Shown: positions 1 to 10,514, numbered from the stretch's first letter. The stretch is 10,514 nucleotides of DNA from Takakia lepidozioides (GCA_030704615.1 JAKLZA010000348.1:1-10514), one strand, 5' to 3'. The notes: a model not told the origin generated them from the letters alone. A program made the numbers and translations.

Positions 1-2
1 GG

Positions 3-3000
3 TCTGGTGGTTATAACAATGGCATGGAAGGGAGAGGTAATTCAAGAGGGAATTACCAAGGAAATTCCAGAGGCAACTATCAGGGTAATCCAAGGGGGAA
101 TTACCAGCCCGGGAATCAGGATTATAGAAATAATCCAAGAACAGACCAAGGGCGAGGACCCAATGGTGAAGAGCTATGTTACTATTGTAATCAGCCAGGA
201 CATCGCAAGGCAGCCTGTTCATTCTGGATAAGACACCAGAATGAGATGAGAGCTCCTGTGAATGAGGGCCCAGTGGTGGCAGCTCACATGGTTAGGCCAT
301 GTGTTGTACCAGAAGTAAGTACAATGATAGTAACAAGAAGTAAAGCCAAACTAATACCTCCAGTAGAAGAGGAAGAAGATGAGACTGGAAGTGGCAATGA
401 TATGCCTGAAGATGAAGAGACTTGGAAAGATGAGAAGGAACTGCACAAGGAAGTGGCAGATACTATAAGGGAAATGCAAAAGAGTACGGATATTCCTGTG
501 GCAGATTCCTCTGTTTCGGATGGAGAAAAAGAGGGGAGTGAGGAAGAAAGGAAAAAAGAAGATGCAGACATGCAAAGTAATGAAGAGACTTTGGCTGAAG
601 TAATATGTCAGACCAAAGCAGAAATTACCATTGGACAGCTATTAGCTGTGGCACCTTATTGTAGGCACAGGCTGTATCAGGCAATCAATCGAATTGCCCA
701 AGAGACAGGAAACACAGACCTGAACAGCAAGGTGACCAGTTATAATGTGAAGCCGGAAGGGCGAGAACCAGTCATGGACTTTGATGATTCTATGCCAGTA
801 ATCCAATTGAGAATTGGAAGCACAGAACTAACTGATGTACTGATAGATGGTGGTTCTGGAGTAAATATCATGACAGACCAATTAAGGAAGAAGCTTGGTC
901 TAAGTAACATGAAACCAGCCCCATTTACAGTAACAATGGCAGATCAAAGAAGTGTGCAGCCATTGGGATTAATAAGAGGAGTTAAGATACAGATACAGAA
1001 AATGATCTTTATGATCACAGTAACTGTATTAAAAATGGATGAAGTCATGGAGGCTTACTCCTTATTATTGGGACGTCCGTGGCTGAAACAGGCCAGGGTA
1101 TTCCATGACTGGAATTCTCAGTTATTAACCGTGCATAATGGGATACACGAGATACAAATTACCACAAAGAAATCTAGTAGATTACCTGCTACAAGAAGAC
1201 CTCGAGGAGTCAGAGAGTATGATTGGAGAGGAGGACTGGATGAGGAGCAGGAAGCTACCCTATTTGCTGCACACCCAGAGTGGGAGCAGGTTGCAGAGAT
1301 GCGGCTGGAAAGCCTAAGTTGTTTGAGAGGTATCTGCTGTGGTGTAGTGACAGCAACACCAACTGAAGAAGAAACCAGCATTTACCCATCACATTTCTAT
1401 GAAGAAAGAGAAGGAGAAATAGAAATCCTAGAAGAACCAGCCACTGTGAGCTTACAGGATGAAGTGGTGACTGGTTGGACAATCACAGCTGATGAGCAGG
1501 TGAGAGAAGTAAATGTGGGAACTCAGGAGGAACCGAGGATGGTGAAAGTAGGAGCTGATTTGGAGCCGGAATTCTTCGAAGAAGCTAAAAGCTTGTTCAT
1601 CAAATACAGAGATGTATTTGCTTGGAGCTATGAGGATCTAAAAGGGATACCACCTGAAGTCTGTCAGCATAAAATTGAACTGGAACCAGGGTCAGTACCA
1701 ATCAAGCAGGCGAGGTATAGAATGAATCCCAACTACGCACAGAAGGTTGGAGAGGAGATAAAGAAGTTGGCTGAGGCTAAGTTTATATACCCAATAGAGT
1801 ATACAACTTGGTTGTCACCCATTGTTATAGTTCCCAAGAAGAATGGCAAACTAAGAGTATGTGTGAACTATAAGAAGCTGAATGCTTGTACGAAGAAAGA
1901 TCCTTTCCCTTTGCCATTCACAGAAGCAGTATTAGACACTGTGGCAGGCCATGAGATGTACTCATTCATGGATGGCTTCAGTGGTTATAATCAAGTGCAA
2001 GTGGCAGAAGAAGACCAAGGGAAAACAGCTTTCATCACAGACTGGGGGGCTTATGCATACAAAGTCATGCCCTTTGGACTTTGTAATGCACCAGCGACCT
2101 TTCAAAGAGTGATAAGTGAATCTTTTCAAGAGTATCTGGATGATTTCATGCAGGTGTTTTTGGATGATTTCAGTGTGTACAGCTCTAAGAATGAGCACTT
2201 GCATAAATTGGAGTTATGCCTGGCCAGATGCAGGATGAGAGGTCTGGGCTTGAACCAAGAGAAGTGTACTTTCTGTGTGAACTCAGGGGTGCTTCTGGGA
2301 CACATTGTGTGTAAGAAGGGACTCCTTGTGGATCCCAGGAAGACAGAGTCCATTAAAGCCTCTCCACCACCAGTGAATGTTAAGAGTTTAAGGAGATTCC
2401 TTGGGCAAACCAGTTATTACAGAAGATTTGTCAAAAGGTATGCACAAATAGCAGCACCATTGAGCAAGCTTCTGAAGAAAGATGCAGTGTTTGCATGGAC
2501 AGCTGAATGTCAACAGGCGTTTGAGGAACTTACACTGTCAGTAACAACTACACCTGTGCTGATTAACCCTCACTGGCATGTAGTATTTCATGTTCACTGC
2601 GATGCATCAGGAGAAGCGTTGGGAGCGGTGTTAGCCCAGAATGTTACAGGGAATATAGATTCACCTGTGTACTATGCTAGCCGGTTGATGAACAGTGCTG
2701 AGAGGAACTATAGCACAACGGAAAGAGAAGCATTGGCAATGATCTATGCAGTGAAGAAATTCAGGCATTACCTATTGGGAAGAAAGTTTATGTTTTATGT
2801 GGATCACCAGGCTCTGATATATCTGGTGAACAAACCTTTGATAAGTGGAAGGATAGCGAGGTGGTTAATAATCTTGCATGAGTTTGAGTTCGAGGTTATT
2901 TACAAGCCTGGCCGTTTGCATCTTGTGGCAGATCATTTGTCACGACTAACAACAGGAGAGGCCGCCACAGGAGTGGACGATCAGTTACCTGATGCGAGTT

Positions 3001-3518
3001 TATTTGTAATGGAGGTGCAAGGAAGTGCAGATGAATGGTTAGATTGGCAGTGGCCAATCAGATACTACCTTGCTCATGGTCAGTGCCCACCTAGTTATGG
3101 TAAGGAGCAGAGGAAGAGAATCGCTATCAAAGCTTTACCTTATACTATGGTAGGAAGCAGAATGTATAAGTTAGGACCAGATCGGGTACTAAAACGATGC
3201 TTGTACCACCATGAAGTAAATAAAGTCTTGGAGGAAGTTCATAAAGGAGTGGCTGGAGGTCATTTTGGAGAAGAGACTACCAGTAGAAAGATACTACTCG
3301 CAGGATACTGGTGGCCTACTTTGTTCAAAGATGTACATGAGTATTGTCAGAAGTGTGATGAATGTCAGAGGCTAGGACCTTTGCAGAGATCTGGAAGAAT
3401 GGCCTTGCATCCTACAATGCCTACGGAACCATTTCAGAAATGGGGACTAGACTTTGTTGGACCAATTAATCCACCATCCAAGAATACACCAAAACAGGTA
3501 CATAATTACAGCCACTGA
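3..3518 (+). CDS. gag-pol: Gag-Pol polyprotein, 5'-truncated (Gag C-terminus, aspartic protease, RT, RNase H, integrase N-terminus)
   Basis: The frame is open to the window edge, so M at 24 is probably internal. Motifs: CCHC knuckle CYYCNQPGHRKAAC (177-218); protease LIDGGSG (D at 846) and LLGRPWL; RT MDGFSGYNQ (D at 1971), MPFGLCNAPATFQR and FLDD (2157-2168); RNase H CDASG (D at 2601), EREALA, DHQAL and ADHLSR; integrase HHCC (3240-3365) and WGLDFVGP (D at 3450). Confidence 0.96.
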   Translation, partial: SGGYNNGMEGRGNSRGNYQGNSRGNYQGNPRGNYQPGNQDYRNNPRTDQGRGPNGEELCYYCNQPGHRKAACSFWIRHQNEMRAPVNEGPVVAAHMVRPCVVPEVSTMIVTRSKAKLIPPVEEEEDETGSGNDMPEDEETWKDEKELHKEVADTIREMQKSTDIPVADSSVSDGEKEGSEEERKKEDADMQSNEETLAEVICQTKAEITIGQLLAVAPYCRHRLYQAINRIAQETGNTDLNSKVTSYNVKPEGREPVMDFDDSMPVIQLRIGSTELTDVLIDGGSGVNIMTDQLRKKLGLSNMKPAPFTVTMADQRSVQPLGLIRGVKIQIQKMIFMITVTVLKMDEVMEAYSLLLGRPWLKQARVFHDWNSQLLTVHNGIHEIQITTKKSSRLPATRRPRGVREYDWRGGLDEEQEATLFAAHPEWEQVAEMRLESLSCLRGICCGVVTATPTEEETSIYPSHFYEEREGEIEILEEPATVSLQDEVVTGWTITADEQVREVNVGTQEEPRMVKVGADLEPEFFEEAKSLFIKYRDVFAWSYEDLKGIPPEVCQHKIELEPGSVPIKQARYRMNPNYAQKVGEEIKKLAEAKFIYPIEYTTWLSPIVIVPKKNGKLRVCVNYKKLNACTKKDPFPLPFTEAVLDTVAGHEMYSFMDGFSGYNQVQVAEEDQGKTAFITDWGAYAYKVMPFGLCNAPATFQRVISESFQEYLDDFMQVFLDDFSVYSSKNEHLHKLELCLARCRMRGLGLNQEKCTFCVNSGVLLGHIVCKKGLLVDPRKTESIKASPPPVNVKSLRRFLGQTSYYRRFVKRYAQIAAPLSKLLKKDAVFAWTAECQQAFEELTLSVTTTPVLINPHWHVVFHVHCDASGEALGAVLAQNVTGNIDSPVYYASRLMNSAERNYSTTEREALAMIYAVKKFRHYLLGRKFMFYVDHQALIYLVNKPLISGRIARWLIILHEFEFEVIYKPGRLHLVADHLSRLTTGEAATGVDDQLPDASLFVMEVQGSADEWLDWQWPIRYYLAHGQCPPSYGKEQRKRIAIKALPYTMVGSRMYKLGPDRVLKRCLYHHEVNKVLEEVHKGVAGGHFGEETTSRKILLAGYWWPTLFKDVHEYCQKCDECQRLGPLQRSGRMALHPTMPTEPFQKWGLDFVGPINPPSKNTPKQVHNYSH
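36..107 (+). repeat. 3 x 24-bp coding repeat (GN[S/P]RGNYQ) in Gag just before the zinc knuckle
   Basis: GNSRGNYQ GNSRGNYQ GNPRGNYQ, with mostly synonymous nucleotide differences between units. Confidence 0.85.
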
Positions 3519-4677
3519 TTATACTACAAAGTGGGTGGAAGCTAAAGCTTTGAGGGACAACACAGCCAAGTCCACAGCAAGGTTCCTGTACGAGAACATA
3601 CTTACACGATTTGGATGTCCTTTAGAATTTATCAGTGATCAAGGAAGTCACTTCATGAATGAGACCATTGAGTTATTGACTAAAGAGTTTATGATTGTGC
3701 ATAGAAAGAGTACAACATATTACCCACAGGGTAATGGACAGGCAGAGGCTACCAACAAAATACTATGTACTATCTTGGCTAAGATAGTCAATGCAAACAG
3801 AACGGATTGGGATACAAAGCTGCTGACAGCTTTATGGTCATACAGGACTTCGTATAAAGTCACCACAAAGTATACACCATTCAAATTAGTTTATGGTATG
3901 GAAGCCTTACTTCCAGTGGAATTCCTGTTACCTACCATGAGAACGGAGTGGGGAAAAAGAATGGAATTGCAAGACTTCATCAAGGTCAGGAAACATGAAT
4001 TATACCATGTGGAAGAAATACGTGCTGATGCAGCTGATAATATGACCAGAATTCAGATGAAGAGAAAGGAACAGTTTGATGAAGGCAAGTTAAAGACTTT
4101 TAAGACGGGGGATTTGGTTCTATGGTTGCAAAAGAAAGGAAAGATTCAAGCTTCTAAGCTTAAATCACCATGGAAAGGACCTTATGTCATACAAAAGATG
4201 TATGATAACAACACAGCCATGTTACAAACCATTAACAAAGAAATGCTGGGAAGAGTCAATGCAAATAAGTTGAAGGGGTACAATGGTATCCATGACAAAC
4301 CCCTGCAGCATGATTTGCATGTTGAACCGCAAGAGCAGTCACGGGCTGCACCAGTGTTACGAACGGAGTATGGAACACTTGTCGCTAGGCCCAGTATATA
4401 TGACCGGGGTGGGCAAAACAAACGTGACACAGCCCATCACGGCGTGACACAGCCTATCACAGCCCAGCACGGCGCAACACAGCCTATCACAGCCCAGCAC
4501 GGCGCAACACAGCCTATCACAGCCCATCACGGCGTGACACAGCCTATCACAGCCCAGCACGGAGTGACGCAGCCTATCACAACCTACCGCAGCGTGTCAT
4601 GTCGCGCGGCTTTTACTCACCCATCCCTTCGCTATCCGAGGCGGAAACTCCAAGATAGAAGAGTTGGAAATCTCTAA
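3490..4677 (+). CDS. pol: Integrase core and C-terminus (continuation of Pol after +1 frameshift); the last ~25 codons run into the inserted LTR
   Basis: YIITATDYTTKWVEA; SDQGSHF (D at 3637) and GQAE (E at 3745) give D-35-E spacing; TPFKLVYG; KLKSPWKGPY (GPY at 4177). Removing one C near 3489 joins it to the upstream ORF as PINPPSKNTQNRYII. Confidence 0.92.
   Translation, partial: QNRYIITATDYTTKWVEAKALRDNTAKSTARFLYENILTRFGCPLEFISDQGSHFMNETIELLTKEFMIVHRKSTTYYPQGNGQAEATNKILCTILAKIVNANRTDWDTKLLTALWSYRTSYKVTTKYTPFKLVYGMEALLPVEFLLPTMRTEWGKRMELQDFIKVRKHELYHVEEIRADAADNMTRIQMKRKEQFDEGKLKTFKTGDLVLWLQKKGKIQASKLKSPWKGPYVIQKMYDNNTAMLQTINKEMLGRVNANKLKGYNGIHDKPLQHDLHVEPQEQSRAAPVLRTEYGTLVARPSIYDRGGQNKRDTAHHGVTQPITAQHGATQPITAQHGATQPITAHHGVTQPITAQHGVTQPITTYRSVSCRAAFTHPSLRYPRRKLQDRRVGNL
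4423..4599 (+). repeat. 30-bp tandem array (ggcgtgacac-agcctatcac-agcccagcac), ~5.5 units, built from 10-bp subunits; copy A
   Basis: Units start at 4441, 4471, 4501, 4531 and 4561, with a truncated unit at 4591-4599. In frame with integrase it reads (HG[A/V]TQPITA[Q/H])n. Confidence 0.95.
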
Positions 4678-5770
4678 GTACTCAGCCCGCGCAGAACAAT
4701 CAATCATGACCTACAGCTAGTGTATCATGGGGGTGTTTCCTATTTGTTTCCTTTTATCGCATTCATCTTAGCTACCTTACCATTGATAATTAAGTATCAG
4801 TTTGCTTCATCAATTTATCGGTTTCCTTAACTCCTCCATTCAATCCACAGCTTCACTCAGATCTCTCTACACAGTGTGATTGTATCGTATAAGTATCAGA
4901 TTATGATTTATCAGGTATCAGGCCGAAGCCATTATGTCTCTAATCTTCTTTCCTATATCACTATAGCTTTGCATATAACAAGCATCTACTAATCCTCTTT
5001 TCTCCTTCATCGTGCTCTCCGATCTCCGCTCCCGCCTGTCTCCGAAGTCCTCCCCGAATAATGATCCCCTCATCATTCCCCGTTCTTCCCTTTATCCTCC
5101 TATCCGCGGTTCTAACCGTTTCCCTCTCTAACCGTCGTATGTGAACTAACATGTTCCCTTCACTGGTGTTGTTCCCCACGGTCGTTCCCTGTCCTACTCT
5201 TCGTTCCCTATTATCGTGACAGCTGTGTCAAGCGATGACTGGCTGTGTTTGGCTGTGTCGGGCTGTGACTGGCTGTGTGGCTGTGCCGGGCTGTGACTGG
5301 CTGTGTGGGCTGTGTCTGGCTGTGTGGCTGTGCCGGGCTGTGACTGGCTGTGTGGGCTGTGTCTGCTGTGACGACTGTGACGGGCTGTGTTGGCTGTGTG
5401 GGCTGTGACGGCTGTGTCGGGCTGTGTTGGCTGTGACAACTGTGACGGGCTGTGTTGGCTGTGTAGGCTGTGACGGCTGTGTCGGGCTGTGTTGGCTGTG
5501 TGGGCTGTGACGGCTGTGTCGGGCTGTGTTGGCTGTGACGACTGTGACGGGCTGTGTTGGCTGTGTAGGCTGTGACGGCTGTGTCGGGCTGTGTTGGCTG
5601 TGTGGGCTGTGACTGCTGTGTCGTCTGTGACGGCTGTGTGGGCTATGTAACCCCCTTCTACAGTGCGCTGCTGTCACCCCTAAGGTTCCTGTTTGTCTCA
5701 GTCTGTGCAAAAATTAAGGGTACCCTACAGATCCCGTATAAGTGTCTAAGTCCCCTACAGTCCTCTAACA
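4600..5770 (-). repeat. Predicted 3' LTR of copy B (1171 bp, TGTTAGAGG...GCCGCGCGACA)
   Basis: Starts with TGT 3 nt after the PPT. Ends in ACA exactly where A/B similarity breaks (A: agcgtgtca|tgtcgcg; B: agcgtgtca|cagccta). The partner LTR is outside the window, so the boundaries are inferred. Confidence 0.82.
5220..5650 (-). repeat. CACAGC(C) motif array in the LTR 5' part (putative U3); 8-10-bp subunits, roughly 45 cores, with higher-order units of ~47 and ~102 bp
   Basis: The + strand reads ggctgtgtt / ggctgtgtcg / ggctgtgac... continuously. The 102-bp unit is visible as the duplicated 34-aa block in ORF 5228..5710. Confidence 0.95.
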
Positions 5771-5773
5771 TTA

Positions 5774-5787
5774 CCCCTTCCCCCCTC
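5774..5787 (-). other. Polypurine tract (plus-strand primer) of copy B
   Basis: The - strand reads GAGGGGGGAAGGGG-TAA-TGTTAG, the canonical PPT/LTR junction, just downstream of the stop codon at 5809. Confidence 0.9.
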
Positions 5788-5808
5788 AAAAAGCCGTGTC
5801 CTCACGGT

Positions 5809-6810
5809 TTACTGTTTCCGAGTAGCAAACCTTTGTGAGTGAGCACCTTGTTGACGTTGAGAGTTTCGTGGTGGGCTGTGTGTACGAGCCCGAGGTCTGT
5901 CTCTGGTTGATGGAGATGGTTGATCACTACCTGGATAAGTGAGGCCTTCTGCAGGTTGATATCGAGGTAATCTTTCCGGCATAGGAGATCCCCTTTGTTT
6001 CTTTTCTTCCATCTGAATTGCATAGTCTTCTCCCATGTCAAAAGAATTTTGTGAAGAAACAGTTGTATCAGAATCGTCATCGCCTCTCAGGTGTTTTAAT
6101 TTTCGAACTTTTTGTGGAATCATCTGGGGCATACAATGCTGTCCTACCATGTCTGGAAGTTTGCATTTTACAACCTGGTGTAACCGTTGAACAGCAAAAT
6201 TGGTGTAGACACTGAGCTCCTTGTCTGTCCAGATGAGTAGGGTACCAATTACTGGTGCAGCGTGCAAGTATTTCCATGCGATATGTCCCTTATAGAAAAT
6301 GTCATCAAGTCCGAATTTCTGTGTTGACAAATTGTTGCAGGCTGCTTGAAACCATGAACAAATTTGAGAATCCTTCTGTATCATAACTTTTGGGTCATAT
6401 AGGTACATATGAGGTGGCACCGAAGGTAATACCCAATGATCTCCACTGGAGTAACTTTGAAAGCGTGCTTGCATCTTTTGTTGCTCTATGTGGTAACGTA
6501 TCAGAAAACAAGCAGCGTAGTATAGCCCGCACCCCATGACAATACTTGCTATTTCCTTGGTCTTGGTATAAATGAGTCCATGTACAACCTGGAAAGCAAC
6601 CAATTCCCTCAACATGGTACCTGCCTCGTGCCAGTATTGTGCAAAGTGATGATCTTCAATATGTCGATTGTTTGGAAGAACTTTAGTCCTGGTTGCCACT
6701 GGCAGCCAAATACGCATGATTTGGTAGTAATGTGCGAATGACTGCGGAGGACTAAATTCTTTCCAAGCCAAATCCAACATGATGGGAATTTGGTTGAAGG
6801 GCATAATCAT
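5809..6810 (-). CDS. Extra-ORF C-terminal segment: unrecognised W/Y/H/C-rich globular domain with an acidic then Arg/Ser-rich tail
   Basis: 333-aa open frame ending ~20 nt before the PPT. No family recognised. Confidence 0.7.
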   Translation of the reverse strand: MIMPFNQIPIMLDLAWKEFSPPQSFAHYYQIMRIWLPVATRTKVLPNNRHIEDHHFAQYWHEAGTMLRELVAFQVVHGLIYTKTKEIASIVMGCGLYYAACFLIRYHIEQQKMQARFQSYSSGDHWVLPSVPPHMYLYDPKVMIQKDSQICSWFQAACNNLSTQKFGLDDIFYKGHIAWKYLHAAPVIGTLLIWTDKELSVYTNFAVQRLHQVVKCKLPDMVGQHCMPQMIPQKVRKLKHLRGDDDSDTTVSSQNSFDMGEDYAIQMEEKKQRGSPMPERLPRYQPAEGLTYPGSDQPSPSTRDRPRARTHSPPRNSQRQQGAHSQRFATRKQ

Positions 6811-8140
6811 AGCCCTACTGTATTCCCTGGCAGCTGGAGTTTTAGGTGGGTTAAAAGCTGCATTGCCCCATACTCTGGCTGTGGTGGCTGTGGTGTGGTT
6901 GTAGTAACCACAGGTTCAGCTACTGGTACACTGACCTGTTGTGGTGGTGGTGGTACTGGTTCCTGTACCATTGGCATCTCCTGCACCTCCTGTGAAGACT
7001 GAAAAGCCAGAGTTCTGGCTTGCAAATAAGAAGCCATTAGCTGTTCCTGAGGGATATAGACTCTTTGGTCGATGTTTGAAGTGAGGTCTTCCACTTGAGT
7101 CTGGAGTCCGTCTACATCCTCTTGTAACTCTGCTATCCTACTATAGACATTGTCTATAGTAGTTGTGGCAATGTTCTGCACCTGCAGTCTAAGCTCATTC
7201 ATCTCGCTTTGGGTGAGCTTCCGTGGGGCTTTGCCTTCTACTGGCCCTTGTGCTAACCAGACCTGCATAAGTCTGTTATCCACCAAGCTGCTTGTGGTTC
7301 CCCTGAGAGTTTGCTCCTCTCTTAGCTTATACAATTCCAACTGCTGTTGTAAAGCCTTCATGCGCTTCGCCTGTGGCTCAACCAATTGCGCATAGGCAGC
7401 AAGTAGATTATTGGCTTCTTTCGAAGCCTTGTTACTGACCGCGATTTCATTTCTATTGGCCACGATGGTTTGTTGCAACTCCACGATGTATTTCTCATTC
7501 TCAGCTTCCATCTGCCTGTATTGCTTGAGAGTATCTTCATTGCGACAGATTGTATTCTTCATATCGACAATGAGCTTCATATGTTCCACATTCTCTTCTT
7601 CTGCCTTCGTACATTTTTCCGCTTGACTGTTTATTTCTTTTGTTGATTGGTCAAGCATAGTTGTAAATGTAGCGCATTGTATCGCCATCCTGTTATGCAC
7701 TGTCTGCAACTCCGTATGTAGTGCATTCAGTTCTTGCAACTTGCTTTCATGCTGCACCTGCATTTGGTATAGCTGTTGCTTATGTGCTTCGTGCAACTGG
7801 TCTTGCGCGAGGCCTGCCTCAATCAATTGTTGCTTGCCAATTGCAAAGCCATTTCTGTATTGGCCAAGTCCTGCTTCATCTTGAGAGTGACCTCTTCATC
7901 GACCTTGTTTGCACACTCAGTGGCAAGTCGAGCCTCAAACTCCTTCCTGAGTTCTTCTTTCAAGGCTGTCAATTGGGTAATTGGAACATGGGTTTTGACA
8001 TAAGTCCCCAACAAATTAAGTGTCCTGCCTATGGAACTCATCAGCATTGCCTGTTGAGGGTCATCATGGTGAGGTTGCTGCTGTTCCTCCTGATCTTCAA
8101 CAGTATGATGTCTCACTAACCATTCAGACCATTGTCCCAC
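6807..8140 (-). CDS. Extra-ORF middle segments: long Q/E/K/L-rich coiled coil followed by a Pro/Gln linker
   Basis: Heptad-like stretches (LKEELRKEFEARLATE, LQELNALHTELQTVH, IAELQEDVDGLQTQVEDLTS), then EPVPPPPQQ...TTTTPQPPQPE. Frameshift at ~7830. Confidence 0.7.
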
Positions 8141-8642
8141 CGGATTTTCTTCCTGAACTACTTCATTATGACCGGTGCTACAGTGTCATGGCCTTCCGCC
8201 TGTGGTACCTCCGACACAGGTGTGTGCATTATATGTACCTCAGGATTTCTCTTGGGCAACTGTTGCACCTCTGGGATTTCTGTCTGCTTGACCAGACCAG
8301 AATATTCATAGAGAAGGTCCCCTTTCTCTATTTCTGCCACTATCTGTTCTGTAGTTGGAATATCTATCCCTTCACTTTCCAAATCAATTATTTCGGGTTG
8401 AGCTGCATGGATAACTTGTGACCTTGTGACAAGTCGTTCAAGTGGCTGTGTTGGTTGTGATGCAGAAGTAACTTCTTCCTCCCTCTCTGAAGGTCCTGCT
8501 TCCAGTAATAACATTCTTTTGTGCTGCTGTGCCCCTTCCTGGTCATGAGCTTGGGAAACATTATCATGCGGAATCCGTGAAGCCAGTGGATCCGCCACTA
8601 CAGTCTTTCCCCTTCTCTGCCTCTTAGTCTCGGGTTGTGCTG

Positions 8643-9527
8643 CTAGTCCACCCCACTGTGTGAAGAGCCTTGCTCTTCCATTGCAGTTGTTTCTGGCTCA
8701 AACACTCCCATTTCCTTCCTTTCTTGTGCATTAAGTATGCCAGAACTTAGGATTATTTGAGCAATGATTGGGCCAGACACTATGATAGGAGATTTTGCGG
8801 TAGTACCTTGTAATCTTTTCATCTCCTCTACCAGTGCGTTGTACATTATGTCCGCCCATGGTACCTCTTGTCCCTTCAAGCCTTTGAGGATTTCCTCTGT
8901 GAAGGATCTGCTCAAATATTGTTGGTTCTGTTTCAGGGCAATCAGAACGTTCAATACTTGGCCTATGTCTTTTAACCCTGGGTACACAGCTTTGGTACAA
9001 GCATAACCCTGAGTTTTAAAGAAACTCCCTTCTTGGAATAAATCCCCTATTTGCAGTCTTTCCCTGTGTTCCTCCACATACACATGACCTGCTGGCAATC
9101 GAAACAATTGCTGGAGGTATAGGGGAGTAATCATTAATTCAACTCCCTTCACCGTTGTTGTTCCTGTCTTTGGCTCAAAGTTCTGCAAAAATTGTAACAT
9201 GTACTGTCTATGGTGTAGTGTCCAATCCATGCTTTGCAATCCTTCCAATCTCAGCTCCTTCAGTATCTTTATCGCCTGTGGGGTAGCCATCGTTTGTTTC
9301 TGCAGAATTGTGGTGCTCTTCACCCTGATTTCCTCCATTCCTCTCACTCTCTTCATCTTAGACTCACAGAACTGCTTTGGCTGTAACAACTGCAGGAATG
9401 CCTGTAGTGCACAAAGCAGAAACGTATGGTTGCCGCAGAAAGCTATGGGTAATCTCTTGTAAGCCTGCGGGGCTTGCAAGCATTGTTCAAGAAAAAGCTC
9501 TGCTCTTTCGTTTCGTGTCTTTGCCAT
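8643..9527 (-). CDS. Extra-ORF segment 1: globular domain resembling plant retroelement accessory domains (PMD / Transposase_32-like)
   Basis: 294 aa. QFLQNF...TVKGVELMITPLYLQQLFRLPAG and EVPWADIMYNAL recall the 'EF..N...V.G..I.IT...I..L.LP..G' and 'W...LY..L' patterns of such ORFs. The resemblance is by eye only. Confidence 0.5.
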   Translation of the reverse strand: MAKTRNERAELFLEQCLQAPQAYKRLPIAFCGNHTFLLCALQAFLQLLQPKQFCESKMKRVRGMEEIRVKSTTILQKQTMATPQAIKILKELRLEGLQSMDWTLHHRQYMLQFLQNFEPKTGTTTVKGVELMITPLYLQQLFRLPAGHVYVEEHRERLQIGDLFQEGSFFKTQGYACTKAVYPGLKDIGQVLNVLIALKQNQQYLSRSFTEEILKGLKGQEVPWADIMYNALVEEMKRLQGTTAKSPIIVSGPIIAQIILSSGILNAQERKEMGVFEPETTAMEEQGSSHSGVD

Positions 9528-10036
9528 TGCGTAAGTAATATTGCGAGCGTATAGTCTGTTAGTTCCTCCATAGTTTCCAAGTTATAGCATTTATGGCCTG
9601 TCCTGTCGAGACGCCCGTTACTCAGAACGACGTCGCCTCTTGCGCTCAATTTCCTCCATTTTCTTGATCATTTCTCTGTTTTCTATTGGCTGTATCCGCT
9701 GTGACTGGATTTTAACTTTTATCTTCTTTAGTGGACTTTCCCTGTTGGATAGTCCACTAGGATCAACATGCGACATGAATTCAGTTTTTCTGTACTTGCC
9801 GTTCGTTCTTTCCTTTTTCCGTATTCATTAATGGGCCCGCCTTTCATCCCTTTGACGGCCGTTCTTGTCCTCTTTCTTTTTGACACCTGTCCTTGCACTT
9901 CATTCTCTGCTGTGTGTCGCACCCTGACCTCCACGTGTCTATTTTTAAATTAATTTCCGTTTCTTCTTCTTCAGCCATTTTCCTGAAGTTTTTATGTGTC
10001 CACTTGTCACTGATTCTATGGATCGTGTATTTTAGT

Positions 10037-10328
10037 AGGCTGTGTTGAGCTGTGACAGGCTGTGTCATACTGTGTTACGCTTGATAGGCTATGTTGCACT
10101 GTGGTAGCTGTGATAGGCTGTGACACGCTGCGGTAGTTGTGTAGGCTGTGTTGCGCCTTGTCTGGGTTGTGGTTGCTGTGTCACGTCGTGACGGCTGTGG
10201 TAGGCTGTGTTGCGCCTTGCTGGGCTGTGGTTGGCTGTGTCACGTCGTGATGGGCTGTGATAGGCTGTGTCACGCCGTGATGGGCGTGATAGCTGTGTCA
10301 CGCCGTGATGGCTGTGATAGGCTGTGCA
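10037..10328 (-). repeat. 30-bp CACAGC tandem array, copy B (complete array, degenerate and indel-rich)
   Basis: Reverse complement of the 4423-4599 array, continuing ~85 nt beyond the point where copy A is interrupted. Confidence 0.93.
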
Positions 10329-10514
10329 CGTTTGTTTTGCCCACCCCGTGTCATATATCTGGGCCTACGACAAGTGATTCCATACTCCTTTCGTTAACAC
10401 TGGTGCAGCCCTGACTGCTTTGACTGCTTTTTCGGTTCAAACATGCAAATCAATGCTGGCAGGGGTTGTCATGTACCACTGTACCCCTTCAACTTATTTG
10501 CAATTGACTCTTCC
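10329..10514 (-). pseudogene. pol: 3' end of integrase/pol, copy B (many 1-nt indels relative to copy A)
   Basis: The reverse complement ggaagagtcaattgcaaataagttgaaggggtac... aligns to 4249-4430. Confidence 0.85.

What the first reader, a model, noticed from the sequence alone, without database searches (positions are those of the whole stretch)
4423..10328. Candidate accessory-protein plus cognate motif-array system in an LTR retrotransposon
Seen: the same CACAGC(C) core, in the same orientation relative to the element, is amplified in two differently organised arrays. One is in the LTR (5220-5650; 8-10-bp subunits) and one lies between pol and the extra ORF (30-bp units of 3 x 10 bp). The unit structures differ while the core is shared, which suggests the motif itself is being maintained. 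Established: Arabidopsis VANDAL DNA transposons encode VANC proteins that bind short motifs amplified in their own tandem repeats and remove silencing. Inference: the large extra ORF could be an analogous sequence-specific anti-silencing or transactivating factor. Each core contains a CHG (CAG/CTG) site, and ~10-bp spacing would place sites on one helical face. A host-factor enhancer array is the alternative explanation.
Basis: partly seen in the sequence, partly recalled or inferred. Interest (0 to 1): 0.85.

Follow-up and report, generated by a model that had tools for sequence, protein, structure and literature searches.

The report
Retrotransposon accessory gene with matching motif arrays
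A very abundant plant LTR retrotransposon carries a large extra gene whose conserved domain has the plant-mobile-domain fold and best matches the DNA-bound anti-silencing protein VANC21, and the same short motif (CACAGCC) is stacked in arrays in its promoter region and just upstream of that gene, so a self-encoded regulator with its own binding sites is plausible but unproven.

Summary
GGCTGTG/CACAGCC occurs 64 times against 1.9 expected, almost all in three arrays.

The window holds two tail-to-tail copies of one Ty3/gypsy family:
- Copy A (+, 1-4599) is cut inside its post-pol array.
- Copy B (-, 10514-4600) has pol end, array, a ~4.2 kb sense extra ORF, PPT, and a 1171-bp LTR with a 0.43-kb U3 array.

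What the tests showed:
- The family is very high-copy.
- The extra ORF is broken in this copy but under purifying selection across copies (20 of 32 variants at third codon positions).
- It is not envelope-like. It has a basic NLS-like leader, a PMD/Transposase_32-like domain, a probable coiled coil and an unknown C-terminal domain.
- The best solved-structure match of the PMD-like domain is VANC21 bound to its target DNA (Z 7.0, 201 residues; next hit 4.3).
- Two relatives with a homologous extra ORF have other over-represented motifs (CAATTG; TTGCGG); a third related element shows none.

PMD-coiled-coil extra ORFs and post-pol or U3 tandem repeats are already described in Tat-like elements. 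The pairing of protein and motif is the new, untested part.

The scan's first readers noted the same arrays and ORF at several other places in this genome.

The parts
1..4599 (+). Copy A of the family: 3' part of gag (zinc knuckle), protease, RT, RNase H and integrase. It has a frame break inside integrase near 3454-3518. It is truncated at 4599.
   Evidence: ORFs 24-3518 and 3454-4677. Pfam hits: zf-CCHC, gag-asp_proteas, RVT_1, RT_RNaseH, Integrase_H2C2, rve. Homology to copy B ends at 4599.
4423..4599 (+). Post-pol array of copy A: 30-bp units, each 3 x 10 bp (CACAGCC / CACGGCG / CACAGCC subunits), 92% matches and no indels. In this copy it lies in frame with pol as a 10-residue repeat.
4600..5770 (-). 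3' LTR of copy B (1171 bp; TGT...ACA ends).
   Evidence: Contigs from all four runs leave the window at 4599/4600 into a PBS-like sequence that starts TGGCGACC one base after the LTR end. A contig joint falls exactly at 5770. The PPT lies directly upstream.
5220..5650 (-). U3 array: 42 subunits of 8-10 bp with sense core CACAGCC. Higher-order periods are 28, 37, 65 and 102 bp. It spans LTR positions ~120-550, upstream of TATA-like sequences near 4975.
   Evidence: The TATA-like sites were read by eye (inferred).
5774..5787 (-). Polypurine tract (GAGGGGGGAAGGGG), followed by TAA and then the LTR start TG.
   Evidence: Read.
5812..9978 (-). Sense extra ORF (~1389 codons from the ATG at 9978, in an AAAATGGC context). 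In this copy it is broken into open pieces 10038-9847, 9949-9731, 9824-9621, 9581-8646, 8697-8161, 8185-7826, 7895-6810 and 6915-5812.
   Evidence: Among 32 well-supported differences between copies, 20 lie at third codon positions and 18 are synonymous. Many other copies differ by single-letter indels at or near several break points.
9621..9978 (-). Basic N-terminal leader of the extra ORF (25-32% K+R) with NLS-like clusters.
8688..9314 (-). PMD/Transposase_32-like domain. It is the only part of the extra ORF with detectable homologues.
   Evidence: Homologues at E 2e-14 to 4e-4 in Diphasiastrum, Selaginella and metagenomic plant contigs. Homologous ORFs follow pol in L001, L003 and L005. AF2 model pLDDT 78, pTM 0.75. 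Atlas fold hits: a PF20167 cluster and a cluster partly annotated PF10536. Best solved-structure hit: VANC21-DNA, Z 7.0.
6960..8000 (-). Q/E-rich region, probably coiled coil.
   Evidence: Only weak matches to coiled-coil families, e.g. Fib_alpha 0.0047. Homologue P0002 also has coiled-coil family hits after its domain. No formal coiled-coil predictor was run.
6046..6813 (-). C-terminal, aromatic-rich, apparently globular region of unknown fold.
   Evidence: No homologues. No Pfam hit. The single-sequence AF2 model is unusable, pLDDT 38.
10036..10326 (-). Post-pol array of copy B. It has the same 10-bp subunits as copy A's array but carries indels. It ends 58 bp upstream of the extra ORF's ATG, and a TAAAATA sequence lies at 10034-10028.
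10330..10514 (-). 3' end of pol (integrase GPY/F module) of copy B. The frame stops shortly after LKGY, before the array.

Best explanation
**Proposed mechanism**
The extra ORF of this non-chromoviral (Tat-like) Ty3/gypsy family encodes a nuclear accessory protein. Its PMD/Transposase_32-like domain recognises DNA in the way VANC21 does. The CACAGCC subunits are its cognate sites. They are stacked in one orientation in U3 (upstream of the LTR promoter) and again just upstream of the extra ORF. Dense binding, helped by multimerisation through the probable coiled coil, would keep the element's transcription units active, either by opposing silencing marks or by transactivation.

**Shown here**
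- The anatomy of the two copies.
- The motif enrichment.
- The high copy number of the family.
- Purifying selection on the ORF.
- The PMD-like fold and the VANC21 structural match.
- A homologous ORF in related elements.

**Inferred**
- DNA binding.
- The identity of the target.
- Nuclear localisation.
- The effect on silencing.
For: - **Fold.** AF2 model pLDDT 78. Atlas hits: a Transposase_32 cluster (TM 0.50/0.69) and a cluster with 14% PMD members (TM 0.60/0.66).
- **VANC21 match.** The best of 48,161 solved chains is 9lnk_A, VANC21 with target DNA. Z 7.0, 201 aligned residues covering the whole confident domain; rank 2 has Z 4.3.
- **Sequence link.** Homologue P0002 hits PF20167 at 3.5e-8.
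- **Literature.** PMD-C proteins sit at specific motifs and oppose Polycomb silencing, and PMD-C resembles VANC DUF1985. VANC targets are short motifs arrayed in one orientation at high density in non-coding tandem repeats (PMC5735166).
- **Arrays.** 64 core sites against 1.9 expected, all sense-oriented, in U3 and 58 bp upstream of the eORF ATG.
- **A real gene.** Third-position excess p = 7e-4; synonymous excess p = 1.6e-4.
- **Nuclear rather than membrane protein.** Basic NLS-like leader and no transmembrane segment.
- **Relatives have their own motifs.** L005: CAATTG 42 against 5.0 expected, 11 per kb in the LTR, none in the flanks. L003: TTGCGG 22 against 2.8 expected, sense-biased, none in 4.4 kb of flank, with the related GCGGTG in its U3 array. 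Null maximum z is 7 or less.
Against: - No binding, methylation or RNA data. No listed run holding the stretch is on record as RNA.
- Z 7.0 with rmsd 5.4 Å is, by the tool's own note, typical of the best hit for models without a true relative. Foldseek and HMM searches of the PDB found nothing.
- No DUF1985/DUF287 or PMD Pfam hit for the window protein, even at E up to 10.
- hhalign against one bona fide Transposase_32 domain is weak (probability 4.7%).
- Direct DNA binding by PMD proteins is itself not yet demonstrated.
- L004, a relative whose post-pol ORFs showed no detected PMD-like domain, has only a TC run and a coding repeat. L001, a weak homologue in a broken copy, has no amplified motif.
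- Three elements with three motifs is too few to show co-variation.
- Tandem repeats in U3 and between pol and the LTR are common in this group of elements without any known link to the extra ORF (PMC11963269).
Confidence: 0.4

Rival explanations
1. The arrays are host-factor sites. The U3 array is an enhancer made of repeated binding sites for a host transcription factor. The post-pol array is a copy of the same module that serves an internal promoter for the extra ORF. The PMD-like protein acts elsewhere, for example on chromatin through host partners or in nuclear import.
For: The array sits in U3 upstream of TATA-like sequences. A second array lies 58 bp upstream of the ORF's ATG, with a TAAAATA sequence between them. 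Repeated U3 motifs bound by host factors are established for tobacco Tnt1 and Tto1 (own knowledge). The subunits contain bZIP-like TGACG and CCGAC-like cores (read). The L004 element has no amplified motif apart from a TC run and a coding repeat.
Against: This does not explain why the accessory protein's conserved domain best matches a transposon-encoded, motif-array-binding protein. It also does not explain why two relatives have their own element-wide motifs that are absent from their flanks. No host factor for CACAGCC was identified here.
Confidence: 0.3
2. The arrays are neutral by-products. Slippage-prone tandem repeats of the kind common in U3 and in the pol-to-LTR region of Tat-like elements grew from one ancestral ~10-bp subunit. 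They share a core by descent, not by selection.
For: Both arrays are built from the same 9-10-bp subunit with different higher-order periods. Many array-internal joints in contigs suggest length variation. Family-specific arrays of unknown function occur in about half of recently active Retand elements (PMC11963269). Ogre 3' UTR repeats even seed satellites (PMC7004042, title and abstract as listed).
Against: The 7-nt core is kept at 91-100% per position in 42 LTR subunits while the 1-3 nt linkers vary freely. Both arrays are covered by contigs at depths of the same order as their flanks, in a family with tens of thousands of contigs. First-reader notes report the same arrays at other copies.
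Confidence: 0.17
3. The motif acts at the RNA level. Both arrays lie in the 3' part of the genomic RNA in sense orientation. They would bind an RNA-binding factor for export, packaging or splicing of a subgenomic message for the extra ORF. Each core also offers a CAG acceptor-like site.
For: The orientation is strictly sense in all arrays and in the six non-array sites. The L003 motif is also strand-biased: TTGCGG 27 against 9, GCGGTG 24 against 0.
Against: The L005 motif is palindromic. No RNA reads were available. The protein's fold relatives act on DNA.
Confidence: 0.08
4. The extra ORF is an envelope-like gene, as in Athila-type elements, and is unrelated to the arrays.
For: It is a sense ORF between pol and the 3' LTR with a coiled-coil-like middle. 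This is the classic position of env-like ORFs (PMC7264820).
Against: It has no signal peptide or transmembrane segment. The best 19-residue hydrophobic windows (1.85 and 1.72) lie inside globular parts. It has a basic NLS-like leader and a PMD-like fold.
Confidence: 0.02

Closest known systems
VANC anti-silencing proteins of Arabidopsis VANDAL (Mutator-like) DNA transposons and their motif arrays (PMC5735166; PMC10398659; PDB 9lnk)
   Same: Both are transposon-encoded accessory proteins. The extra ORF's conserved domain gives VANC21-DNA as its best solved-structure match. In both, a short motif is stacked in one orientation at high density in tandem repeats in the element's own non-coding regions, upstream of its transcription units.
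   Different: The host element here is an LTR retrotransposon, not a DNA transposon. There is no sequence-level DUF1985/DUF287 membership. This protein is much larger and has a probable coiled coil and an extra C-terminal domain. Binding and loss of silencing are not shown.
PMD-coiled-coil extra ORFs (eORFs) of Tat-lineage Ty3/gypsy elements, including Ogre (PMC4408406)
   Same: Both have a PMD-type domain followed by a coiled coil, encoded by an extra ORF of a non-chromoviral Ty3/gypsy element and conserved across copies.
   Different: The described eORFs are antisense at the 3' end or sense at the 5' end. They were reported from gymnosperms and angiosperms, and none was seen in moss Tat-like or Selaginella elements. 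Here the eORF is sense at the 3' end, about 1390 codons long, with an added C-terminal domain, and sits in an element whose nearest named pol and eORF relatives are mostly non-seed plants. The element has a single RNase H.
Retand elements: long pol-to-LTR region with tandem-repeat arrays and antisense Transposase_28 ORFs (PMC11963269)
   Same: Both have a long region between pol and the 3' LTR that holds family-specific tandem arrays and an accessory ORF. That ORF is predicted to bind DNA and proposed to be regulatory.
   Different: In Retand the ORF is antisense and carries Transposase_28, not the PMD/Transposase_32-like domain. That work did not report a motif shared between the internal array and U3.
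Host PMD-C proteins MAIN/MAIL1/MAIL2 with M1M/M2M promoter motifs (PMC7156037; preprint 10.1101/2024.09.27.615353)
   Same: Both use a PMD-type fold. The host proteins associate with specific short DNA motifs and protect transcription from Polycomb silencing. The authors themselves suggest that TE-encoded PMDs may be anti-silencing factors.
   Different: These are host genes of the PMD-C clade with single promoter motifs, not arrays. The window's domain is only distantly PMD-like, and direct DNA binding is unproven on both sides.
U3 tandem enhancer repeats of plant LTR retrotransposons (Tnt1 BII boxes, Tto1 13-bp motif; own knowledge)
   Same: A short motif is repeated in tandem in U3, upstream of the promoter.
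   Different: Those repeats are bound by host factors, have few copies, and have no second array next to an accessory gene.

Membership tests
Ty3/gypsy LTR retrotransposon | Domain order gag (zinc knuckle) - protease - RT - RNase H - integrase | tested here: met
   Pfam hits in that order on ORFs 24-3518 and 3454-4677.
Ty3/gypsy LTR retrotransposon | LTR with TG...CA ends, PPT before the 3' LTR, PBS after the 5' LTR | tested here: met
   The LTR spans 4600-5770 and the PPT 5774-5787. Contigs from four runs continue from the LTR end into a TGGCGACC... PBS-like sequence. The 5' LTR of either copy lies outside the window.
Tat-lineage element with PMD-CC eORF | Extra ORF with a PMD-type domain | tested here: inconclusive
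   Met at fold level and through homologue P0002 hitting PF20167 at 3.5e-8, which is below Pfam's cut-off. The window protein has no Pfam hit at E up to 10. hhalign to one Transposase_32 domain is weak.
Tat-lineage element with PMD-CC eORF | Coiled coil after the domain | tested here: inconclusive
   Only weak hits to coiled-coil families, plus Q/E-rich composition. No dedicated predictor was run.
Tat-lineage element with PMD-CC eORF | RT phylogeny within Tat; additional RNase H (aRNH) in most lineages | tested here: not met
   There is a single RNase H domain, as reported for moss Tat-like elements. RT phylogeny against reference lineages was not done, so the lineage name is inferred.
VANC anti-silencing system | Protein of the DUF1985/DUF287 family | tested here: not met
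   No such Pfam hit for the window protein or for any of the 11 aligned relatives at E up to 10. There is only a fold-level match to VANC21, Z 7.0.
VANC anti-silencing system | Encoded by a VANDAL (Mutator-like) DNA transposon | tested here: not met
   The host element is an LTR retrotransposon.
VANC anti-silencing system | Short motif arrayed in one orientation at high density in the element's non-coding regions | tested here: met
VANC anti-silencing system | Protein binds the motif and causes loss of DNA methylation and derepression | not testable with these tools
   Needs EMSA or DAP-seq, ChIP, and bisulfite or nanopore methylation data.
env-like ORF (Athila type) | Signal peptide and transmembrane anchor | tested here: not met
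   Hydropathy scan: no N-terminal or C-terminal hydrophobic segment; the leader is basic.
Post-pol tandem repeats of Tat/Ogre/Retand elements | Family-specific tandem array between pol and the 3' LTR | tested here: met
   Arrays at 4423-4599 and 10036-10326. Relatives L003, L004 and L005 lack this array.

The most novel reading that the evidence does not exclude
Retrotransposons with PMD-type extra ORFs, a class that fills much of many large plant genomes, would each encode a sequence-specific anti-silencing factor. Each factor would recognise a family-specific short motif that the element amplifies in itself. Here that motif is CACAGCC, in arrays; in the two relatives it is CAATTG or TTGCGG, scattered through the element. 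This would be the retrotransposon counterpart of VANC, and a likely source of the host MAIN/MAIL motif-reading regulators.
Probability: 0.2. Interest if true: 0.9.

Novelty: new variant of a known kind. Interest (0 to 1): 0.62.

Why it matters
The role of the PMD-coiled-coil and related extra ORFs of Tat/Ogre/Retand-type elements has been open for some twenty years. These elements make up large parts of many plant genomes.

This family gives a concrete, cheap test. One domain has a confident model and a DNA-bound structural template (VANC21). One 7-nt core is present in about 40 copies per LTR and again in front of the gene.

If binding holds, sequence-specific self-protection from silencing would no longer be a peculiarity of Arabidopsis VANDAL DNA transposons. 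It would extend to LTR retrotransposons and back to non-seed plants. It would also link the host PMD regulators MAIN/MAIL to that origin.

Tried and rejected
**Searches on the rest of the extra ORF**
- C-terminal piece against the word-indexed protein database: no hit.
- Atlas feature search on the same piece: no usable hit.
- Single-sequence AF2: pLDDT 38, unusable.
- phmmer and blastp of all ORF pieces against the second ORFs of L003, L004 and L005: nothing beyond the N-terminal domain.

**Searches on the PMD-like domain**
- Profile search with alignment A2: only 5 hits, none with a Pfam label.
- Foldseek against the PDB: no hit at E 0.001 or better.
- HMM against PDB sequences: none, even at E 10.
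- hhalign of A2 against one Vicia Transposase_32 domain: probability 4.7%.

**Attempts to find more copies**
- Exact look-up of the 294-aa window ORF in assemblies: not on record. The same look-up for P0001 also failed.
- Metagenome scan for three spaced cores: 120 loci that match only inside unrelated repeats, with no LTR flank homology. A few were contigs of human-gut metagenomes; apart from the bulk blastn, which ran over every fetched locus, they were not examined or used.

**Other**
- Paper search for a VANC21 structure paper: none held.
- Envelope reading rejected.
- Reading pol, array and extra ORF as one polyprotein rejected as the general state. Copy B stops after LKGY, and in L003 and L005 pol and the extra ORF are separate frames. 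Copy A's pol frame does, however, stay open through its array.
- Contig joints inside and between arrays were not used as evidence. The contigs come from short-word assembly, and the flanking matches are only 20-29 letters.

Full report
**Anatomy**

The window is not one element. It holds two copies of one Ty3/gypsy family lying tail to tail.

- **Copy A** (+ strand, 1-4599) carries a zinc knuckle, protease, RT, RNase H and integrase. A tandem array follows at 4423-4599.
- **Copy B** (- strand) shows, in order:
  - the last ~185 bases of pol (10514-10330);
  - the same array (10326-10036);
  - a long, mostly open region down to 5812;
  - a polypurine tract (5787-5774);
  - a 1171-bp LTR (5770-4600).
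- Homology between A and B stops at 4599, exactly where B's LTR ends.
- In four public runs, contigs that cover the LTR end leave the window at that point. They continue into a sequence that begins TGGCGACC one base after the LTR. That is a primer-binding site, so these are 5' LTR contexts.
- One contig joint falls exactly at 5770. Both LTR borders are therefore independently supported.

**The observation**

- GGCTGTG occurs 64 times against 1.93 expected.
- Relative to each element the core is always CACAGCC on the sense strand.
- The U3 array (5220-5650) has 42 subunits of 9, 10 or 8 bp. The seven core positions are 91-100% conserved and the linkers vary freely. Higher-order periods are 28, 37, 65 and 102 bp.
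- The post-pol arrays are built of 10-bp subunits in 30-bp units: CACAGCC, CACGGCG, CACAGCC.
- Both arrays therefore derive from one ~10-bp subunit but were amplified separately.
- Spacing in U3 is mostly 9 bp, so strict helical phasing does not hold.

**Abundance and conservation**

- In Logan contigs of the source organism (coded A; a plant), tens of thousands of short contigs lay on 4401-10400. All thirty bins are covered in four runs from three samples.
- Summed depths over the LTR, both arrays and the extra ORF are of the same order.
- First-reader notes from other pieces of this genome describe the same arrays and ORF. The scan has therefore seen this family before on other DNA. Those notes are unchecked.

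**The extra ORF**

- From an ATG at 9978 (context AAAATGGC) to 5812 there are about 1389 codons. In copy B they are broken into eight open pieces.
- Many other copies differ by single-letter indels at or near several of the break points. I built no mended frame.
- Of the 32 best-supported differences between copies that fall in the ORF, 20 are at third codon positions and 18 are synonymous. The p values are 7e-4 and 1.6e-4. The ORF is therefore a gene under purifying selection within the family.
- It has no hydrophobic anchor or signal. Its first ~120 residues are 25-32% K+R with NLS-like clusters. An envelope-like role is unlikely.
- Pfam finds nothing above noise in any piece.

**The conserved domain**

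- Only the part encoded by about 9314-8688 has relatives:
  - hypothetical proteins of the lycophytes Diphasiastrum and Selaginella;
  - metagenomic plant ORFs, at 23-29% identity and E down to 2e-14.
- The Selaginella protein hits PF20167 (Transposase_32) at 3.5e-8, followed by coiled-coil families.
- An AF2 model from an 11-sequence alignment is confident: pLDDT 78, pTM 0.75.
- In the ESM Atlas its nearest folds are a Transposase_32 cluster (TM 0.50/0.69) and a cluster in which 14% of members carry the plant mobile domain (TM 0.60/0.66). All are from land plants.
- Foldseek against the PDB found nothing.
- The exhaustive aligner placed one chain well above all others. This is 9lnk_A, 'VANC21 in complex with its target DNA': Z 7.0, rmsd 5.4 Å, 201 residues aligned across the whole confident domain. 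Rank 2 has Z 4.3.
- Z 7 alone is within the tool's stated range for chance best hits. Four things make a real fold relationship likely; I put it at about 70%:
  - the margin over rank 2;
  - the coverage of the domain;
  - an independent preprint statement that PMD-C resembles the VANC DUF1985 domain.
- Sequence-level membership in DUF1985/DUF287 is not met.

**Relatives**

- The nearest pol proteins are 50-60% identical. They are metagenomic or from liverworts and ferns.
- Two angiosperm gene models carry PF20167 on the same polypeptide as pol domains. In the Tripterygium model integrase is followed by Transposase_32 and then a coiled-coil region.
- Three related elements with full loci were fetched. 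In L003 and L005 an ORF directly after pol is homologous to the window's domain.

| Locus | LTR identity | ORFs after pol | Tandem arrays |
|---|---|---|---|
| L003 | 86% | three; the first is homologous to the window's domain | 43-bp array in U3 only |
| L004 | 84% | present; no homology to the window's domain detected | a TC run in the LTR and a 51-bp repeat upstream of pol, in the gag position |
| L005 | 99.9% | two; the first is homologous to the window's domain | none |

- The CACAGCC arrays are therefore specific to this family.
- A motif test gave an unplanned result:
  - L005 holds CAATTG 42 times against 5.0 expected, at 11 per kb in the LTR and none in its flanks.
  - L003 holds TTGCGG 22 times against 2.8, strongly sense-biased and absent from 4.4 kb of flank. 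The related GCGGTG (24 sense, 0 antisense) sits in its U3 array.
  - Simulated sequences never exceed z = 7.
  - L001 and the array-free parts of the window show nothing unusual.
- So three related elements with this ORF each have their own amplified short motif. That is what a protein-plus-target system predicts, but three cases cannot show co-variation.

**What is already known**

- PMD-coiled-coil and Transposase_28-coiled-coil extra ORFs are described for Tat-lineage elements. They lie antisense at the 3' end or sense at the 5' end. None was reported in moss or Selaginella elements (PMC4408406).
- Retand elements combine a long pol-to-LTR region, family-specific tandem arrays and an antisense ORF predicted to bind DNA. 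Their author proposed a regulatory role (PMC11963269).
- Sense 3' ORFs are usually read as env-like (PMC7264820).
- VANC proteins bind 8-9-nt motifs arrayed in one orientation in tandem repeats of their own VANDAL copies and remove silencing (PMC5735166).
- MAIL1/MAIN/MAIL2 sit at specific motifs and oppose Polycomb marks. TE-encoded PMDs were suggested as anti-silencing factors (preprint 10.1101/2024.09.27.615353).

**Reading**

My best reading (0.4) is that the ORF protein is nuclear and binds the CACAGCC arrays through its PMD-like domain. That would keep the LTR promoter, and perhaps an internal promoter or processing site for the ORF, active.

The rivals are:

- host-factor enhancer arrays, with the protein acting elsewhere (0.3);
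- neutral slippage repeats that share a core by descent (0.17);
- an RNA-level role (0.08);
- an env-like ORF (0.02).

Nothing here tests binding, methylation or expression. No listed run holding the stretch is on record as RNA.

**Novelty**

Each component is of a known kind. What is new:

- The extra ORF is sense, at the 3' end, about 1390 codons long, with an added C-terminal domain. It sits in an element whose closest relatives are in non-seed plants.
- The same core is stacked both in U3 and directly upstream of the ORF.
- The ORF's domain shows a fold-level link to the DNA-bound VANC21 structure.
- Family-specific motif over-representation appears in relatives.

I class it as a new variant of a known kind, with a clear bench test.

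Noticed in passing
window 4590-4610: Copy A is cut inside its own post-pol array exactly where the 3' LTR of copy B ends, in opposite orientation. This looks like a nested insertion of the family into itself. The other junction is outside the window, so no target-site duplication could be checked.
   Followed up: partly
window 5770 joined to 4401 (contig of run X3): One contig joins the LTR start, in inverse orientation, to the sequence just before the post-pol array. This would be a second self-nested insertion next to the array in another copy. It may be chance in so abundant a family, or a hint of insertion preference.
   Followed up: no
window 3454-4677: In copy A the integrase frame stays open through the whole array, reading it as a 10-residue repeat (QHGATQPITA-like). 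In copy B pol stops shortly after the LKGY motif, before the array. Two of the three frames of the array are open, so this may be chance.
   Followed up: partly
window 6876-6895: A 9-bp repeat (TGGCTGTGG x 2.2) with the same core and orientation lies inside the extra ORF, where it encodes PQPPQP. Contigs diverge here (loose ends at 6873), and the frame of copy B changes nearby.
   Followed up: partly
window 3561, 4212, 5874, 6877, 6886, 8444: All six CACAGCC sites outside the arrays are in sense orientation for their element; none is antisense. On my rough estimate about one per strand would be expected.
   Followed up: partly
L005:417-11764: In a related, young element (LTRs 99.9% identical) the palindrome CAATTG occurs 53 times (42 when one LTR is counted, against 5.0 expected). 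Density is 11 per kb in the LTR, and there are none in 1.36 kb of flanks. The element has no tandem repeats at all.
   Followed up: partly
L003:1-13257: TTGCGG occurs 27 times on the sense strand against 9 antisense. GCGGTG occurs 24 times against 0. Both are spread over the LTR, pol and the extra ORFs, and both are absent from 4.4 kb of downstream flank. GCGGTG is part of the 43-bp U3 array.
   Followed up: partly
L003:13199-17144: The flank of the related element holds 109-bp tandem repeats with a tRNA-like T-arm sequence. It also holds a 0.9-kb array of 9-11-bp subunits (GGGAGCAGA-type), organised much like the window's U3 array.
   Followed up: no
window 5278-10247 and 5596-10039 (contigs of run X3): A few contigs join the U3 array directly to the post-pol array, skipping the whole extra ORF. 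They could be array-to-array recombinants lacking the ORF, or artefacts of short-word assembly. The flanking matches are only 20-24 letters.
   Followed up: no
window 35-106: A 24-bp unit repeated three times lies at the start of the gag-pol ORF of copy A, around the zinc-knuckle region.
   Followed up: no
same genome, other pieces (notes s1-479574, s1-479686): First-reader notes report a 5.1-kb LTR element without gag/pol that carries only a PMD-like/coiled-coil ORF. They also report a DNA transposon with a PMD-like/RING protein and GGACT arrays in its introns. Both are unchecked, and both bear on the same idea.
   Followed up: no
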